Notes: generated by a model not told the origin, from the sequence alone. Positions 25,923 to 34,785 are shown, counted from the first letter of the stretch. The stretch: DNA of 64,000 nucleotides from Podarcis muralis (GCF_964188315.1 NC_135666.1:2604001-2668000); one strand, 5' to 3'. Program-made: numbers and translations.

Positions 25923-27406
25923 CTAGTTTGGCGGAGGCGGTGGGGGCGGCTGGATCTGCCTCACCACATACCCCTGTCGGAGGCTGACGCCCGTCTCTCC
26001 CGGGGCGGCCACGTTCCTGTGGCTCCTCTGGTGGGCGCGCATGTTGGAGCCCTGGCTGAAGACCCTGGGGCAGAGCGGGCAGGCATAGGGCTTCTCCCCC
26101 GTGTGCAGGCGCTCGTGAGACACCAGGTTGGACTTCTGGGAGAAGCGCTTGGGGCAGCGGCTGCAGGCGTAGGGCTTCTCGCCCGTGTGGATGCGGATGT
26201 GCGCCACCAGGTAGGGCTTGCAGCGGAACTGCTTGGCGCAGACGGGGCACACAAAGGGGCGCTCGGCCATTGCTGCGGGAGGGGGCGGCAGCACGCCGGG
26301 CAGCGGCGGCAGAGGGGTGTCGCCCTGCGCGCAGGCCAGGCGGGCATCGGTTGGCACCGGCGGCACCGGCGGCAGCGGCAGGGGCCGGCGGAAGGCGTCC
26401 AGCCCGAGGGCGTCTGCCGCGGTGCGCGGGTTCTGGAAGGCGTCTCCCTCGAAGGCGTCCAGCGGGTGGCTGGGCGGCAGGGGCTCCCTGGTGTGGATCT
26501 TCTGGTGGGAGATGAGGTTGGGCTTGTGGCGGAAGCTCTTGCCGCACTGGGCGCACACGTAGGGCTTTTCGCCGGTGTGGATGTGCTGGTGCGACGCCAG
26601 GTAGGCCTTGCTGCCGAAGGACTTGCCGCACTCCTGGCACTGGTAGCGGCGCTCGCCCGTGTGCACCTGCCGGTGCGCCAGCAGGTTAGGCTTGTGGCGG
26701 AAGCTCTTGCCGCACTGGGCACAGGCGTAAGGGCGGTCGCCCGACAGCTGCGCCAGGGCTCCCGCTTTGGGCACGGAGCCGGCGATGCCCTCGGCCGCCA
26801 TGTGCGCCATCTGGTGTGTCACCAGCTCCTCCCAGCCGTGGAAGCTCCAGCCACACTGGTCGCAGATGAACTCCCCGTTGCTGGGCAGGCCGGGCGCCTG
26901 GTGGCCGGGCAAGGGCTGGGGACCGTAGCCCAGCGACCAGGGGTTGAAGCCATGCGTCAGAGGAGACTGCTGGTGCAGAGCCATCTCCGGCCAGAAGGGC
27001 AGGGTGCCCTCGCCCTGGCTGCAGGGGAAAGGGCTGGGGCTGGCACCCGGCTGGCCTTCCTGGGGCACGGCAAGCTCCGGCGCCTGGGGGGCCCTTCCCG
27101 CGCTCTGGGGGCCCGGCCGGGGCCACTTGCGGACGTGCAGGCGCCGGTGGGCGGTCAGCGCCAGGCGGCCCAGGAAACGGCGCTGGCACTTGGGGCACTT
27201 GAAAGGCTTCTCCCGCTTGGGGGTCTTTGACCGGTCTGCAGGGGCCCGGCCGGCCCCCGAGGGCTCCCGCGTGGCCTGCGACGCCCCTCTCTTGGGGCCC
27301 TTCTTGGCAGCCCGAGGGCGGGGGGTCTTTGCCGAGTCTGGACCGGGTCCCTCAGAGGCCACTGGGGTGTCCGGCCCCTTTTGGGGCTGCGTCTCGATCA
27401 CGTCAG
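25923..27406 (-). CDS. REPIN1: REPIN1 orthologue, zinc-finger exon (8 intact C2H2 fingers)
   Basis: Helices FRHKPNL (x2), FGSKAYL, FRCKPYL, FSQKSNLVSH and FICDQCGWSFHGWEEL align with human REPIN1 as I recall it (FRHKPNL, FTNKPYL, FRHKPYL, FSQKSNLVSH, FICGNCGRSFAQWDQL). Acceptor cctgcag at 27408-27407, phase 1. Confidence 0.87.
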
Positions 27407-27592
27407 CTGCAGGAAGGAAACAGGAGAGAGGGGAAATGTGGCCATTAATCTGGACACCTCCAAAGGGGACACTTACACCGTTCCATCGCCTAGTCTTCTC
27501 TAAAAGCAGAAGGCAGACCCTCCAAGTGCCCCTGTTTTCCAGGGACATTCCTGAGTTTCTCATTTGATCACGGAATGTCCCGCTTTGTCTTA

Positions 27593-28420
27593 AAAGGTAA
27601 AGGTAAAGGGACCCCTGACCATTACGTCCAGTCGTGGCCGACTCTGGGGTTGCGGCGCTCATCTCGCTTATTGGCCGAGGGAGCCGGCGTACAGCTTCCG
27701 GGTCATGTGGCCAGCATGACTAAGCCGCTTCTGGCGAACCAGAGCACACACGGAAATGCCATTTACCTTCCCATCGGAGCGCTACATGCACTTTGACGTG
27801 CTTTCGAACTGCTAGGTTGGCAGGAGCAGGGACCGAGCAGCGGGAGCTCAGCCCACCGCAGGGATTCGAACTGCTGACCTTCTGATCTGCAAGTCCTAGG
27901 CTCTGTGGTTTATGACTTATTAAATCCATCCAAAACTATAATTCAGAAACAATGGGAATGCTTAAATGAATATTTATACAAGCAGGGCTCAAGGTTGTGC
28001 TTAGACTAACCTTGTGAAAAATATAGAGAACATAAAGATTTGACTGATTATGAAAGAACCCAAGGAAGGGAAATGATTCAAGAACAGATGCAAAGGCAAG
28101 CAAGATAACTAGGAGACGTGTGGTGAACGCGGTGGAAGTCTTTTATCATATTTTAACTAGGATGTATAAATTGTAACGTTTGAAGCATGAATTTGGTAAT
28201 ATTATTTGTTATGAAAAGGTTTTTTTCTTTTTCTTTGTCTTTTGTCTTTTTTTTAGTTTGCATTTTGGAAAACATGTATATAAATGTGTTTACAGTGTTA
28301 TGTATTGTTCTTTGTTTCTCTTTCTCTTTCTTTTTTCTTGTAAAATTCTATAATTATTTTTTTTAAAAAAAGAGGCTCTGCAGTTTAGACCACAGCACCG
28401 GACGTCCCTATTTTCATTGG
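27593..28420 (-). mobile_element. Sauria SINE interrupted by an L1-like fragment
   Basis: aaaggtaaagggacccctgaccattacgtccagtcgtggcc tail and body; the head resumes at about 28373 after the insertion. Confidence 0.85.
27913..28372 (+). mobile_element. L1/Tx1-clade LINE 3' fragment
   Basis: Translates IIQKQWECLNEYL (ORF2 C-terminus like 38660-38935), AT-rich 3' UTR, A tail, ~15-bp TSD aggctctg(tg/ca)gttta. Confidence 0.7.
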
Positions 28421-28489
28421 AGAAATGTTGGAGGGTATGGAGTTATCCGACCCCCGAGCCAAGGAGATAAGGAAGTATACAGCTTTTAG

Positions 28490-28636
28490 AAGACATTTTA
28501 AGGCAGCCCTGTATAGGGGAGTTTTTAAATGTTTAATGCATTATTATGTTTTTATATGTGTTGGAAGCCGCCCAGAGTGGCTTGCGCAACCCAGGCAGAT
28601 GGGTGGGGTACAAATAATGAAATTGTTGTTGTTGTT
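28490..28636 (+). mobile_element. L2 3' end with (TTG)n tail
   Basis: ttggaagccgcccagagtgg...ggggtacaaataatgaaattgttgttgttgttg. Confidence 0.8.
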
Positions 28637-28774
28637 GAGTAGGACATCCCTACGTTGAGTAGGAATGTTGGAGGGGATGAGAAGGGGAGCTCTTTACGTG
28701 GATCAGGCCCAAGGGGATCCATGCCCTGGAAGCCACAGGGGGTTTGGCATGGGTGTGACTAGGATTTTTGTCAT

Positions 28775-32365: not shown

Positions 32366-33105
32366 CACTCCATCGCCCGCTCCTCCTCTATGAATTTGCC
32401 TAATCCCCTTTTAAAGCCATCTAGCTTGGTGGCCATCCCTGTGGCAGGGAGTTCCATAGTTTAACTCTGTGCTGTGTGAAGAAGGGCATCGAAAACCTCT
32501 CCTGAATCTCCCAGCGTTCAGCTCCCTCGGATGCCCCCGAGTTCTGGCTTCAGGAGAGAGGAGGAAAAACTTCACCCCTCTTCTAACGCGTCTGCTCTTC
32601 CTCACCCTTTCCCTAAACTAGAAAGTCAGGCCCATTGGCCCATCTAGCACAGTATTGTCTGCACTGGCTTGCAGCAGCTCCTCTGGGCTTTCAGGCAAGG
32701 AGCCTTCCCAGCCCTAACTGGGGAAAGGATGGAAGCTGGGACCTTCTGAGCTGCAGCCCTTCCTATTGAAATGAGCAAGGTTCCAGTCCTCATGTCTCTG
32801 AATCCCCAACCTCTGCTTAAAAACCTCCAACGAAGGAGAACCTGCCGCCCCTCCCTGGGAGTCTGTTCCCCCGTCCAACAGCTCTTTCTGTCCGGACGTC
32901 AAAGAATTGGAAGGGACCCCAGGGGTCATCTAGTCCAGCCCCCTTTCAAAGCAGGAATTGCCACGTCTAAGGTCGGTAGTTTGCGCTGGCTGTGGGCAGG
33001 ACTCCTGCATTGCATTTGGGGTTGGACTAGATATACGCTGAGGGTCCCTTCCAACTCCACAATTCTGTGATTCCTCGTGTTTACTCTCCTTTGGGGTCAT
33101 TTGAA

Positions 33106-33143
<38 letters not shown>

Positions 33144-33194
33144 GGCCAGCTCCCCCCCCCCCCAAAAAAAACCCAGTATATATGTCGACTTTAC

Positions 33195-33321
33195 CCAGTG
33201 AGGAGACCAGCTCGTAATTCTCTGCCATTACGTCTTGGTATAGCTCCTTCTGCCATTCTGCCAGCTGTGCCCACTCCTCGCGCGAGAAATAGACCACCAC
33301 GTCCTCAAAGGCCACGGGCAC
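33195..33321 (-). CDS. REPIN1: REPIN1 KRAB-A exon ([43 protein letters not shown])
   Basis: Canonical 127-nt phase 0-1 KRAB-A exon with ttgcag acceptor and G|gtaaag donor. Confidence 0.88.
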
Positions 33322-34761
33322 CTGCAACGAGGAGAAGCCCCCTCTCTCAGCACCGCAGGATCCAGCCCTGTTTCGGGAAGACTGCCGCCACACCAAATCC
33401 CATACTGGAGGAAGGACCGCGTATTTCGGGGGCCGCAGAAGCCACCGATTGCGGCCCTTTCTCGCTCAATGCCAGCCTGCCTGCGAACCGGGTTTCCTAG
33501 CCCTGCCTGGGGACGGGGTCTGGGGCGTTCTGCATGCAGGGCAACTGTCCTGCCACAGAGCCACTTCTGCACGGAGAAAGGCCCTGGGAGCACCGCCTAA
33601 GCTCAGCACTGTCTCTCTCCACCTCTCTTTTTGGGGGGGCGTTTTGGGCAAGGGGGTGGGCATTTCCAGTCCTACCTGGCGATGCCATCGGGGAGGGAGC
33701 CTTCTGCATAGAAAGCGTAGCTCTGCCACAAAGCCCGGTCCCCGTCACCCCGGCAGGTGTGTGGCACGCAAGTGGCCCGCCGGGACCGCCTTGACCTTGT
33801 GGACAAACAAAAGGTGTCTGTGGTCGCTGCAGGGCGGGGGGCACACCTGTCACAGGGCCACTCCGAGGGGAGGGGGCTTCCAAAGCCTTTCCCAATATTT
33901 CTCTGCTTTTTCCCCAGCTGATTTTTCCCCCCTGGTGGTGGCCCTTTCTCAGACCATCAACAATAATATTCGAGCAGAACCTGCACTGGGCTTTGGGGAA
34001 TTAACTCTGACCATTTGGGGGGGCTTAGTTTCTGATATTTTGGGGGAGAAATATGCCAGGAAGACCCTTCTGCCTCGTTTTCCCAGCTCCCTCCTCTGCC
34101 CTGGCCTGCCTGCAGGTTATGGCACCGTCAAGCACCCGATTCCTTCGAAGATGGTGGCGTGGGTCGGTGGGAGGGGGTGGTCTTTACCCAAAAGGGAAAT
34201 GAAATCCGTGGTTTTGGGGTGCAGCCTCCTAGCCTGGAAGGGGGTCTCCGCTTCCGAACGGCCCCCTTGGGTCTCGTTTCATCCAAACGCCCCTCGCTGC
34301 TAACGCAGATCCATCCATCCCCCGTGAAGTTTGACGGGAAGACCGGGGTCCCGGGGGCTGCATTTGCGCCCCTCTCCGGAGCACCCTAAATCGGGGGCCG
34401 GGCAGCGCAGCTCGGGGGTCATTTTCAGCTCTGCTCCCGGTGCCAAAAACGCATTGAGACGGGTGTTTCCTCCGTAGGAAAAGCAGGAAGTCTGTGGGGT
34501 GGGGGTCCCCCCCATTGCGTGCCTTTTAAGAACCCCAAAGAGCTGCGGGTGGGGGGCTGGCAGCGGCTCAGGACGCACGGAGAGGGGCCCCCCTTTCCTT
34601 TCGCTGTAATTTGATATTCTCCCTGCAGGAGGAGGCGCATTCGGATCCTGCACCCCCCGCCACCCCCGAGCCCCTTTTGCAGGAGGGTCCTTGTTGTGAG
34701 GTTGGGGGGGGGAGAGATCAGGCCCCCCCCCCCCCGATGCTGAGGTCTCTCCAGGGCCTAC

Positions 34762-34785
34762 CTGAGCCAGGCTCCCTCCGGCCAT
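34762..34785 (-). CDS. REPIN1: REPIN1 start exon (MAGGSLAQ)
   Basis: Kozak ggaggATGG, CAG|gtaggc phase-0 donor. 24+127+105+1484 = 1740 nt = 579 aa plus stop. Confidence 0.75.

What the first reader, a model, noticed from the sequence alone, without database searches (positions are those of the whole stretch)
25923..34785. REPIN1 orthologue carries a complete KRAB-A+B domain
Seen: four exons (34762-34785, 33195-33321, 31468-31572, 25923-27406) with GT-AG sites and compatible phases give a 579-aa KRAB-ZFP. Known: canonical human REPIN1/RIP60 has no KRAB. The ..EWQKELY.. wording resembles the ancient 7q36.1 KRABs (ZNF777/282/398), but the box keeps the acidic DVMxENY form typical of TRIM28-binding KRABs. 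Inference: REPIN1 was ancestrally a KRAB repressor and mammals lost the domain.
Basis: partly seen in the sequence, partly recalled or inferred. Interest (0 to 1): 0.7.

Follow-up and report, generated by a model that had tools for sequence, protein, structure and literature searches.

The report
Lizard REPIN1 gene carries KRAB domain
The wall lizard's version of the DNA-binding protein REPIN1 really is made with a KRAB regulatory domain that mammalian REPIN1 lacks, as in all lizards and snakes sampled, but the gene model is already in public annotation and it is still open whether mammals lost the domain or squamates gained it.

Summary
The four minus-strand exons, their GT-AG sites and their phases are as stated. 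The 579-aa product is identical to NCBI's 'DNA-binding protein REPIN1 isoform X2 [Podarcis muralis]'. RNA-seq reads and assembled transcripts from three studies join exon 2 to 3 and exon 3 to 4. Exon 2 is a full KRAB A box (Pfam, 75 bits). Exon 3 aligns as a B box to the KRABs of ZNF93 and ZNF568.

Orthology to REPIN1 is supported. Seven of the eight fingers pair collinearly with marsupial REPIN1 fingers, and three have identical DNA-contact residues. The gene lies between RARRES2 and a ZNF775-like gene, with one extra ZNF gene in between.

KRAB-REPIN1 occurs in geckos, skinks, lacertoids, iguanians and snakes. The KRAB is about 80% conserved, against about 35% for the adjacent linker. It belongs to the 7q36.1-type 'EWQKELY' group, in a sauropsid clade without DUF3669. 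It keeps most residues that human KRABs need to bind TRIM28.

Marsupial and rodent REPIN1 have no KRAB. I could not obtain REPIN1 from turtles, crocodilians, birds or amphibians. 'Ancestral KRAB lost in mammals' is therefore plausible (about 50%) but unproven, and exon capture in squamates remains a live rival. This is a new member of a known kind, of modest interest.

The parts
34762..34785 (-). Exon 1: start codon plus 7 codons (MAGGSLAQ), phase-0 donor
   Evidence: Read directly. It equals residues 1-8 of P0001. The same short 'M..G.SAQ' first exon precedes related KRABs in turtles and caecilians. Its joint to exon 2 was not covered by reads.
33195..33321 (-). Exon 2: KRAB A box, 127 nt, phase 0 to 1
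   Evidence: Pfam PF01352 gives 75.3 bits, E 2.8e-21, covering profile positions 1-41 of 42. It is joined to exon 3 by 14 and 18 RNA reads and two contigs. Mean identity across 13 other squamates is 81%.
31468..31572 (-). Exon 3: KRAB B box (ECLLSIPELLSRLARGEAP) plus a proline-rich tail, phase 1 to 1
   Evidence: There is no Pfam hit, because the Pfam model covers only the A box. phmmer aligns it with the B boxes of ZNF93 (7z36) and ZNF568 (7w5q). It is joined to exon 4 by 8 and 5 reads and two contigs. The B-box part is 76% conserved in squamates, against 39% for its tail.
25923..27406 (-). Exon 4: linker, eight C2H2 fingers (1 + 1 + 3 + 3) with decayed finger relics between them, and the stop codon
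   Evidence: Translation and Pfam zf-C2H2 x8. Fingers L2-L8 pair with marsupial REPIN1 fingers M3, M4, M5, M6, M9, M10 and M11 in order. Contact residues HPNA, HPNS and QSNS are identical. Fingers F2-F8 are 97-99% identical across squamates.
62550..62711 (+). Synteny anchor: first coding exon of RARRES2 (chemerin), on the strand opposite to the ZNF genes
   Evidence: The exon has a signal peptide plus '..QQRALELVLDFFH..VQATFKEQAV' and ends at a GT donor. Its only PDB match among 177,635 sequences is chemerin 9uyh, at matching positions, with a weak E of 0.5.
15070..16662 (-). Synteny anchor: finger exon of a ZNF775-like gene downstream of REPIN1, with no KRAB exon upstream
   Evidence: Pfam finds 9 zf-C2H2 stretches; my motif count gives ten fingers. 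The two nearest Atlas clusters are both ZNF775, at 0.98 with 180 and 175 shared features. No KRAB-like match lies between 17 and 25 kb.
48486..59230 (-). Extra ZNF gene (ZNF-X) between REPIN1 and RARRES2, with decayed KRAB exons of the same type
   Evidence: The finger exon 48486-50168 has seven fingers. A KRAB-A relic '..VVMENYELVTSLG' with a frame shift lies at about 53051-53170, and a KRAB-B 'LKPDLLSRIERAGE' at 51909-51977. Bird orthologues are 61% (pigeon locus) and 54% (owl P0201) identical.

Best explanation
This is the common wall lizard's orthologue of REPIN1 (RIP60). It is transcribed from the minus strand as a four-exon mRNA with the standard architecture of a KRAB zinc-finger gene:
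- a tiny first exon;
- a 127-nt KRAB A-box exon;
- a B-box exon;
- one large exon with the linker and all fingers.

The protein joins an N-terminal KRAB A+B module of the ancient 7q36.1 'EWQKELY' kind, without DUF3669, to eight REPIN1-type fingers. The DNA-contacting residues of those fingers largely match mammalian REPIN1.

The same fusion is present in every major squamate lineage sampled, and the KRAB is held by purifying selection.

Inferred mechanism: the conserved fingers bring the protein to REPIN1-type sites (AT-rich ATT repeats in mammals, from my own knowledge). The KRAB then recruits a cofactor, most likely the lizard TRIM28/KAP1 co-repressor, so that squamate REPIN1 acts as a sequence-specific transcriptional regulator.

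Evolutionary reading, also an inference: I put about even odds on REPIN1 arising as a KRAB gene of this cluster and losing the KRAB exons on the mammalian stem, while squamates kept the KRAB but let about half of the fingers decay.
For: Gene model and expression:
- Splice sites and phases were read directly.
- The product is identical to P0001.
- Splice joints e2-e3 and e3-e4 are seen in two raw RNA-seq runs and two assembled runs.
- Nearly all reads that enter exon 4 come from exon 3: 8 of 8 in one run and 5 of 9 in the other.

KRAB:
- Pfam gives 75 bits.
- A and B boxes align to the ZNF93 KRAB solved in complex with TRIM28 (7z36) and to ZNF568. D-V, E-E-W, L-Y and V-M-x-E-N-Y are kept.

Orthology:
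- Alignment with marsupial REPIN1 P0141 is collinear.
- Each of fingers L2-L8 has its best partner in order, and three of the four-residue contact fingerprints are identical.
- The R[HC]KP[NY]L helix signature occurs three times in squamate REPIN1 and marsupial REPIN1 P0141 (four times in the duplicated rodent model P0107), and in none of the other fetched proteins.
- The nearest Atlas clusters are REPIN1.
- The gene order is RARRES2 / ZNF-X / REPIN1 / ZNF775-like.

Breadth and constraint:
- Pfam KRAB is recorded in REPIN1 of Rhineura, Salvator, Python, Sceloporus, Ahaetulla, Tiliqua, Eublepharis, Pogona, Sphaerodactylus, Heteronotia, Anolis, Vipera and Pseudonaja.
- KRAB-A is 81% and KRAB-B 76% identical on average, against 35-39% for the flanking linker.

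Ancestry:
- The KRAB type and even the 8-codon first exon occur in caecilians and turtles, so the module predates amniotes.
- The neighbour ZNF-X carries decayed KRAB exons of the same kind.
- The marsupial finger exon is entered in phase 1 about 60 aa before finger 1, as in the lizard (phase 1, 68 aa before finger 1).
Against: - No REPIN1 with a KRAB was found outside Squamata. Among the 150 best matches to the KRAB in 1.84 billion representatives, only the squamate REPIN1 representative has REPIN1-type fingers.
- In the KRAB tree the squamate REPIN1 KRABs sit inside a well-supported group. Every member I could name is sauropsid, and their fingers are unrelated to REPIN1. That pattern fits capture of the module after the split from mammals just as well.
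- The marsupial REPIN1 locus shows no KRAB relic in the gene or in 10 kb on either side. After so much time this says little.
- In human assays, KRABs of genes older than the marsupial-human ancestor mostly do not repress, and 7q36.1-type KRABs do not bind KAP1 (bioRxiv 10.1101/2020.09.09.288324; PMC3971581; PMC6745500).
- The motif M-L-E is M-A-E here. The B box has lost two of the five positions that mattered for silencing memory in ZNF10: KP..I..LE reads IP..L..LA.
- The lizard has 8 fingers rather than 15, so its DNA target may differ from the mammalian one.
Confidence: 0.8

Rival explanations
1. Secondary gain. The amniote REPIN1 had no KRAB, as in mammals. On the squamate (or early lepidosaur or sauropsid) stem its finger exon captured the exon 1-3 module of a neighbouring 7q36.1-type KRAB-ZNF gene. 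This could happen by tandem duplication, deletion or read-through splicing, and is made easy because such finger exons accept phase 1.
For: - KRAB-REPIN1 is seen only in squamates.
- The KRAB tree nests it in a starred group of turtle, alligator, bird and other Podarcis KRABs, all attached to unrelated fingers.
- Related KRAB exons exist right next door in ZNF-X.
- The marsupial gene has other, non-KRAB coding exons that also end in phase 1, so a swap would keep the frame.
Against: - Loss of KRAB exons is the commoner event in this gene family (established knowledge, not tested here).
- No relic finger exon of a donor gene lies between the KRAB exons and exon 4, or upstream as far as ZNF-X.
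- The module is older than amniotes.
- The tree rests on 65 columns, and most forks are unresolved.
Confidence: 0.35
2. Not the orthologue. The gene is a squamate KRAB-ZNF paralogue of the REPIN1/ZNF775 group that automatic annotation has named REPIN1, and the true orthologue is elsewhere or lost.
For: - It has only 8 of 15 fingers.
- Overall identity to marsupial REPIN1 is 36%.
- An extra ZNF gene, not this one, lies next to RARRES2.
- No full reciprocal best-hit test against a lizard proteome could be run.
Against: - Best finger partners are strictly collinear, with identical contact residues in three fingers, whereas ZNF-X and the ZNF775-like gene give scattered partners.
- The RHKPNL signature and its 56-residue spacing are shared only with mammalian REPIN1.
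- The fingers of ZNF-X have their own bird orthologues.
- The downstream neighbour is ZNF775-like, as in mammals.
- A decayed relic of a further mammalian-type finger lies between fingers 1 and 2.
Confidence: 0.05
3. Artefact. Exons 1-3 are untranslated or chimeric read-through pieces, and the functional protein starts within exon 4, as in eutherians.
For: The exon 1-2 joint was not covered by my reads. Expression is low, with depth of about 3-11.
Against: - The reading frame is open across all joints.
- The A and B boxes are conserved at about 80% over the whole of Squamata while the adjoining linker drifts to 35%.
- Spliced reads and contigs come from three independent studies.
Confidence: 0.02

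Closest known systems
Mammalian REPIN1 / RIP60 (replication initiator 1)
   Same: It has orthologous fingers in the same order. There are three 'RHKPNL / RHKPYL' helices with the same spacing, the contact residues of three fingers are identical, the finger exon is entered in phase 1, and the gene lies between RARRES2 and ZNF775.
   Different: The lizard protein has an N-terminal KRAB A+B, which is absent from marsupial and rodent REPIN1. It has 8 fingers instead of 15, and several mammalian fingers are represented only by decayed relics.
Sauropsid 'ZNF783-like / ZNF568-like / ZNF92 homolog' KRAB-ZNF genes with an N-terminal KRAB (turtles, alligators, birds; also Podarcis 'ZNF671-like')
   Same: These carry the closest KRAB domains. 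The first exon 'M..G.SAQ' is the same, the A box '..EEWA.L.EWQ+ELY.DVM.ENYELV.SLG' is the same, and they fall in one starred clade in the KRAB tree.
   Different: Their finger arrays are unrelated to REPIN1, with at most 37% identity and no RHKPNL signature. Several carry two or three KRABs.
ZNF777 / ZNF282 / ZNF398 / ZNF783 family (DUF3669 + variant KRAB, human 7q36.1)
   Same: They share the 'EWQKELY' wording, a B box of the form '..KPDLL.RIERGEAP', and a chromosomal neighbourhood next to REPIN1 in mammals. The turtle members are 59% identical over A+B.
   Different: There is no DUF3669: only 8 residues precede the KRAB. The DUF3669 genes form a separate starred clade. At the positions needed for KAP1 binding in human KRABs the lizard keeps DV / EEW / M-A-E, where the turtle DUF3669 genes have ND / QEW / M-K-G. 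The human members do not bind KAP1 (PMC3971581, PMC6745500).
Standard TRIM28-recruiting KRAB-ZFPs (e.g. ZNF93, ZNF568, ZNF10)
   Same: The domain order and exon structure are the same. The A box scores as high as standard KRABs in Pfam (74-75 bits), and most KAP1-contact residues are kept.
   Different: In the tree the KRAB lies with the 7q36.1-type group, not the standard group. L is replaced by A in the MLE motif, and the B box lacks the K and E of KP..I..LE. Binding was not tested.

Membership tests
KRAB zinc-finger proteins (KZFP) | KRAB A box recognised by the family model | tested here: met
   PF01352 gives 75.3 bits against a cut-off of 20.4, covering profile positions 1-41 of 42. The database protein gives 74 bits.
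KRAB zinc-finger proteins (KZFP) | KRAB B box following the A box | tested here: met
   phmmer aligns query residues up to 'RGEAP' with the B boxes of ZNF93 (7z36_D) and ZNF568 (7w5q_A). Pfam has no B-box model, so there is no Pfam hit for exon 3.
KRAB zinc-finger proteins (KZFP) | Tandem C2H2 fingers encoded on one 3' exon, with the A and B boxes on separate small exons in phases 0-1 and 1-1 | tested here: met
   Exon boundaries and phases were read. Pfam finds eight zf-C2H2 stretches. Splice joints are confirmed by reads.
KRAB zinc-finger proteins (KZFP) | Recruitment of TRIM28/KAP1 and transcriptional repression | not testable with these tools
   There is only residue-level resemblance to TRIM28-bound KRABs. 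KRAB and KAP1 co-evolve by lineage (PMC6745500).
REPIN1 orthology group | Finger-by-finger collinearity and conserved DNA-contact fingerprint with mammalian REPIN1 | tested here: met
   L2-L8 pair with M3, M4, M5, M6, M9, M10 and M11. HPNA, HPNS and QSNS are identical, and CPYA/HPYA and QSNA/QSNT match at 3 of 4 positions. The control genes ZNF-X and ZNF775-like give no ordered pattern.
REPIN1 orthology group | Conserved position between RARRES2 and ZNF775 | tested here: met
   RARRES2 exon 1 lies at 62550-62711 and a ZNF775-like exon at 15070-16662. One extra ZNF gene intervenes on the RARRES2 side.
REPIN1 orthology group | Reciprocal best hit between whole proteomes | tested here: inconclusive
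   Ranking by score is swamped by poly-finger proteins. By identity, marsupial REPIN1 is the best non-squamate hit for fingers 2-5, at 56%. The nearest Atlas clusters are REPIN1. The reverse search against a lizard proteome was not possible.
REPIN1 orthology group | Fifteen fingers in three hands, as in RIP60 | tested here: not met
   Eight intact fingers are arranged 1 + 1 + 3 + 3. Decayed relics lie in the spacers. This is lineage-specific decay and does not argue against orthology.
DUF3669-KRAB family (ZNF777/282/398/783) | DUF3669 domain N-terminal to the KRAB | tested here: not met
   Only KRAB is found in residues 1-90, and eight residues precede the KRAB. The turtle ZNF777-like proteins have the long DUF3669-type N-terminus.
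DUF3669-KRAB family (ZNF777/282/398/783) | KRAB falls in the family's clade | tested here: not met
   The DUF3669-type KRABs form their own starred clade (97). The REPIN1 KRABs lie in a neighbouring starred sauropsid group (95). Both are apart from the standard KRABs. The alignment is short, at 65 columns.

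The most novel reading that the evidence does not exclude
REPIN1, known only as a KRAB-less 'replication initiator' and metabolic regulator in mammals, began as a member of the oldest KRAB-ZNF cluster. Squamates preserve that ancestral form with a KRAB that still has the KAP1-binding residues. Under this reading squamate REPIN1 is a living sample of the pre-'variant' 7q36.1 KRAB, and mammalian REPIN1 is a KZFP that lost its effector domain.
Probability: 0.35. Interest if true: 0.55.

Novelty: new member of a known kind. Interest (0 to 1): 0.35.

Why it matters
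REPIN1 is studied in mammals as an origin-binding and lipid-metabolism zinc-finger protein with no known effector domain. A conserved, expressed KRAB on its squamate orthologue suggests what kind of protein it was or can be, namely a sequence-specific chromatin regulator. It also gives a natural pair, with and without KRAB on near-identical DNA-contact residues, for asking what the effector domain adds.

For the history of KRAB zinc-finger genes it adds a case at the 7q36.1 cradle of the family. A member there either shed its KRAB in mammals or acquired one in squamates. Its KRAB sequence lies between the 'variant' non-KAP1 type and the standard type.

The practical weight is limited. The model is already in RefSeq, domain loss and gain are common in this family, and the direction of change is not yet known.

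Tried and rejected
1. Word search with the whole finger exon, and with fingers 2-5 alone. HMMER sums over repeated fingers, so poly-finger proteins outrank true orthologues. Only one marsupial and one rodent REPIN1 surfaced, and no turtle, bird, crocodilian or amphibian REPIN1.
2. Exhaustive search with the KRAB. None of the 149 non-REPIN1 hits has REPIN1-type fingers. This is negative evidence only for KRABs scoring 70 bits or more.
3. Turtle and pigeon loci fetched around related KRAB genes: L002 Dermochelys, L004 Carettochelys, L003 Columba. Their fingers are not REPIN1-like. L003 holds the ZNF-X orthologue and a downstream KRAB gene that runs off the locus. I could not extend it.
4. Carettochelys 'ZNF783-like' P0267 looked collinear with lizard REPIN1 from KRAB to fingers, at 32% identity. 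More than 100 unrelated KZFPs give equal or better end-to-end alignments, so I rejected this lead. Look-ups of P0267, P0266 and P0325 found no recorded gene.
5. KRAB relic in the marsupial REPIN1 locus. tblastn found nothing better than E 0.16, and 4.8 kb of that locus is N.
6. Literature. Eight papers mention both REPIN1 and KRAB, and none treats a KRAB in REPIN1. REPIN1 is absent from the main texts of PMC3971581, PMC6745500 and PMC11476951.
7. The spliced model was never joined by me. The exons were searched one by one by reference. Where a full-length query was needed I used the database record P0001 by its id.

Full report
**What is there**

- Exon 1 (34762-34785) encodes MAGGSLAQ.
- Exon 2 (33195-33321, 127 nt) encodes [42 protein letters not shown] and ends in phase 1.
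- Exon 3 (31468-31572, 105 nt) keeps phase 1 and encodes (E)CLLSIPELLSRLARGEAP followed by a proline-rich tail.
- Exon 4 (25923-27406) is entered in phase 1. It encodes a 67-residue linker, eight C2H2 fingers and the stop codon.

The total is 579 residues. A word search with the exon-4 product returned an identical 579-aa database protein, P0001, 'DNA-binding protein REPIN1 isoform X2 [Podarcis muralis]'. Its first 86 residues equal the exon-wise translations.

They were searched one by one by reference. Where a full-length query was needed I used P0001 by its id.

**Domains**

Pfam scores exon 2 as a KRAB box at 75.3 bits, against a cut-off of 20.4, over 41 of 42 profile positions. It finds eight zf-C2H2 stretches in exon 4. 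Exon 3 has no Pfam hit because the Pfam model stops at the A box. A sequence search of solved structures aligns residues 10-69 of the protein with the KRAB of ZNF93 (7z36, the entry solved with TRIM28) and of ZNF568, straight through their B boxes. 'Complete KRAB A+B' is therefore correct.

**Expression**

I laid reads on window 27330-33329, which is the 6,000 letters allowed.
- The exon 3-4 joint (27406|31468) is seen in 8 and 5 reads of two raw RNA-seq runs, and in one contig of each of two further runs.
- The exon 2-3 joint (31572|33195) is seen in 14 and 18 reads and in the same two contigs.
- Both joints have CT..AC ends, which is GT..AG on the minus strand.
- All first mates lie on the + strand, as expected for a minus-strand RNA in a stranded library.
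- Nearly all reads covering the first bases of exon 4 are spliced from exon 3: 8 of 8 in one run and 5 of 9 in the other. In these samples the KRAB form is the main form.
- The exon 1-2 joint lay outside the stretch and is untested. One contig continues 60 nt 5' of exon 2.

**Is it REPIN1?**

Three lines of evidence agree.

1. Fingers.
   - BLASTP against a marsupial REPIN1 (P0141, Gracilinanus) gives a collinear alignment.
   - Taken finger by finger, lizard fingers 2-8 have their best partners in marsupial fingers 3, 4, 5, 6, 9, 10 and 11, in that order.
   - The four DNA-contact residues are identical in three pairs (HPNA, HPNS, QSNS) and differ at one position in two more.
   - The two other ZNF genes of the window give no ordered pattern in the same test.
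The first two copies are 56 residues apart in both lizard and marsupial.
2. Gene order.
   - A first coding exon of RARRES2 lies at 62550-62711 on the + strand. Its only match among the PDB sequences is chemerin, at matching positions, though the E-value is weak at 0.5.
   - On the minus strand follow an extra ZNF gene (48.5-59.2 kb), REPIN1, and a finger exon at 15070-16662 whose two nearest Atlas clusters are both ZNF775.
   - Mammals have RARRES2-REPIN1-ZNF775 (my own knowledge).
3. Atlas. The nearest Atlas clusters to the exon-4 product are two REPIN1 clusters.

The lizard has 8 fingers, against 15 in RIP60. The spacers hold decayed relics. One is 'FPCSQGEGTLPFWPEMALHQ', which lines up with the marsupial finger 'FFCQVCRQSFKSWAALAMHGQ'. 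Squamates have therefore lost fingers.

**Breadth and constraint**

REPIN1 proteins carrying Pfam KRAB are recorded for amphisbaenians, teiids, skinks, geckos, iguanians and snakes. The fusion therefore goes back to the squamate common ancestor. In an alignment of 14 squamate proteins:

| Region | Mean identity to the Podarcis protein |
|---|---|
| A box | 81% |
| B box | 76% |
| Tail of exon 3 | 39% |
| Linker | 35% |
| Fingers 2-8 | 97-99% |

The KRAB is a maintained domain, not a passenger.

**What kind of KRAB**

- A word search with residues 5-90 found only squamate REPIN1 and then turtle 'ZNF777-like' proteins at 59% identity. Those carry the long DUF3669-type N-terminus and unrelated fingers.
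- The exhaustive search of 1.84 billion representatives added many KRABs that share even the short first exon ('M..G.SAQ|VPV.FEDVAVYFS.EEW..L.EWQKELY'). They come from turtles, alligators, a kiwi, caecilians and another Podarcis gene. NCBI names them ZNF783-like, ZNF777-like, ZNF786-like, ZNF568-like, ZNF92 homolog or ZNF671-like.
- In a tree of 87 KRABs (65 columns, many forks open) the squamate REPIN1 KRABs form one group with support 81. That group sits inside a starred set of 33, every named member of which is sauropsid. The DUF3669-type clade (97, including a lemur ZNF786) lies beside it, and both are apart from the standard KRABs (95).

His second remark also holds at the level of sequence. 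Against the TRIM28-bound ZNF93 KRAB the lizard keeps D-V, E-E-W, L-Y and V-M-x-E-N-Y, with A for L in the M-L-E motif. The turtle DUF3669 genes have N-D, Q-E-W and M-K-G at those positions. The B box reads IP..L..LA where ZNF10 has KP..I..LE.

Whether it binds TRIM28 cannot be computed here, and the literature gives reason for caution:
- KRAB and KAP1 have co-evolved within lineages (PMC6745500).
- Human 7q36.1 KRABs do not bind KAP1 (PMC3971581).
- KRABs of genes older than the marsupial-human ancestor did not repress in a recruitment screen (bioRxiv 10.1101/2020.09.09.288324).

**Loss in mammals or gain in squamates?**

Marsupial and rodent REPIN1 have no KRAB. Pfam finds none in the marsupial N-terminus (residues 1-160) or in the first 460 residues of the rodent model, even at E up to 10. 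The marsupial gene with 10 kb on each side has no relic.

Beyond that I could not get the deciding data:
- No REPIN1 from turtles, crocodilians, birds, tuatara or amphibians came out of the capped searches.
- Loci fetched around related turtle and pigeon KRAB genes hold other finger arrays.
- A turtle protein that looked collinear with lizard REPIN1 was no better than a hundred unrelated KZFPs, so I dropped it.

In favour of an ancestral KRAB:
- The module is older than amniotes (caecilians).
- REPIN1 sits at the edge of the oldest KZFP cluster.
- Its neighbour ZNF-X, which has bird orthologues, carries decayed A-box and B-box exons of the same kind.
- The marsupial finger exon is entered in phase 1 at about the same distance from finger 1 as the lizard's.
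- No donor-gene finger relic lies near the KRAB exons.

In favour of capture:
- The fusion is seen only in squamates.
- Its KRAB nests among sauropsid KRABs that sit on unrelated fingers.
- The phase-1 structure would allow a swap.

I put 'ancestral, lost in mammals' at about one half, 'gained on the squamate or early sauropsid stem' at about one third, and the rest on mixed histories.

**Verdict**

The thing itself is an ordinary-looking KRAB zinc-finger gene that happens to be the orthologue of a mammalian KRAB-less protein. It is already present in RefSeq for many squamates. I found no paper that discusses it.

It is a new member of a known kind, of modest interest. That interest would rise if the ancestral reading, and a KAP1-competent 7q36.1-type KRAB, were shown.

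Noticed in passing
window 48486-59230 (-), especially 53051-53170 and 51909-51977: The extra ZNF gene next to RARRES2 has a KRAB A-box exon that has decayed: 'QVTSEPALVCVSPEE..' in one frame, then '..VVMENYELVTSLG' in another. It also has a readable B box, 'YPVLKPDLLSRIERAGEQC'. Its seven fingers have bird orthologues: the pigeon locus L003 at 61% identity and owl P0201 at 54%. The owl protein has no KRAB.
   Followed up: partly
window 15070-16662 (-): This is a ZNF775-like finger exon (ten fingers by my motif count; Pfam matches nine), organised as three modules that each start with a 'CGxGFxW.S.L' finger. No KRAB-like exon lies in the 8 kb upstream, so this neighbour is KRAB-less in the lizard as in mammals.
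   Followed up: partly
window 27376, 27390, 31533, 33280: All RNA reads of runs X23 and X24 differ from the window at four exonic places. By my reading of the codons, 31533 G>A changes Ala64 to Val inside the B box (RLARGE to RLVRGE). 27376 C>G changes Gly96 to Ala in the linker. 27390 and 33280 are synonymous. These are probably population or subspecies variants.
   Followed up: partly
window 26700-26960 (-), protein residues about 177-264: The spacer between fingers 1 and 2 is 74% conserved among squamates. It contains a decayed finger, 'FPCSQGEGTLPFWPEMALHQQSPLTH', that lines up with an intact mammalian REPIN1 finger. This relic may still have a structural role.
   Followed up: partly
window 27530-27930, 28730-29130, 30530-30730, 31930-32330: Intron 3 and intron 2 of REPIN1 hold high-copy repeats. 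RNA depth there is in the tens to hundreds on both strands, with many loose ends and cross-joints. The reads clearly come from other copies in the genome and not from this locus.
   Followed up: no
window 9582-11213 (-): A 543-aa open frame contains a reverse-transcriptase domain (RVT_1, 127 bits). It is a retroelement copy downstream of the ZNF775-like gene.
   Followed up: no
window 33105-33165 (-): A G-run and a (GA)n microsatellite lie about 25 nt downstream of the exon 2 donor site.
   Followed up: no
L003:23932-31464 (pigeon, + strand): In pigeon, the gene directly downstream of the ZNF-X orthologue is a called 580-residue KRAB gene. Its A box, at 30694-30825, is 56% identical to the lizard REPIN1 KRAB. 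The gene runs off the fetched locus, so its fingers were not seen. It occupies the position where REPIN1 lies in the lizard.
   Followed up: partly
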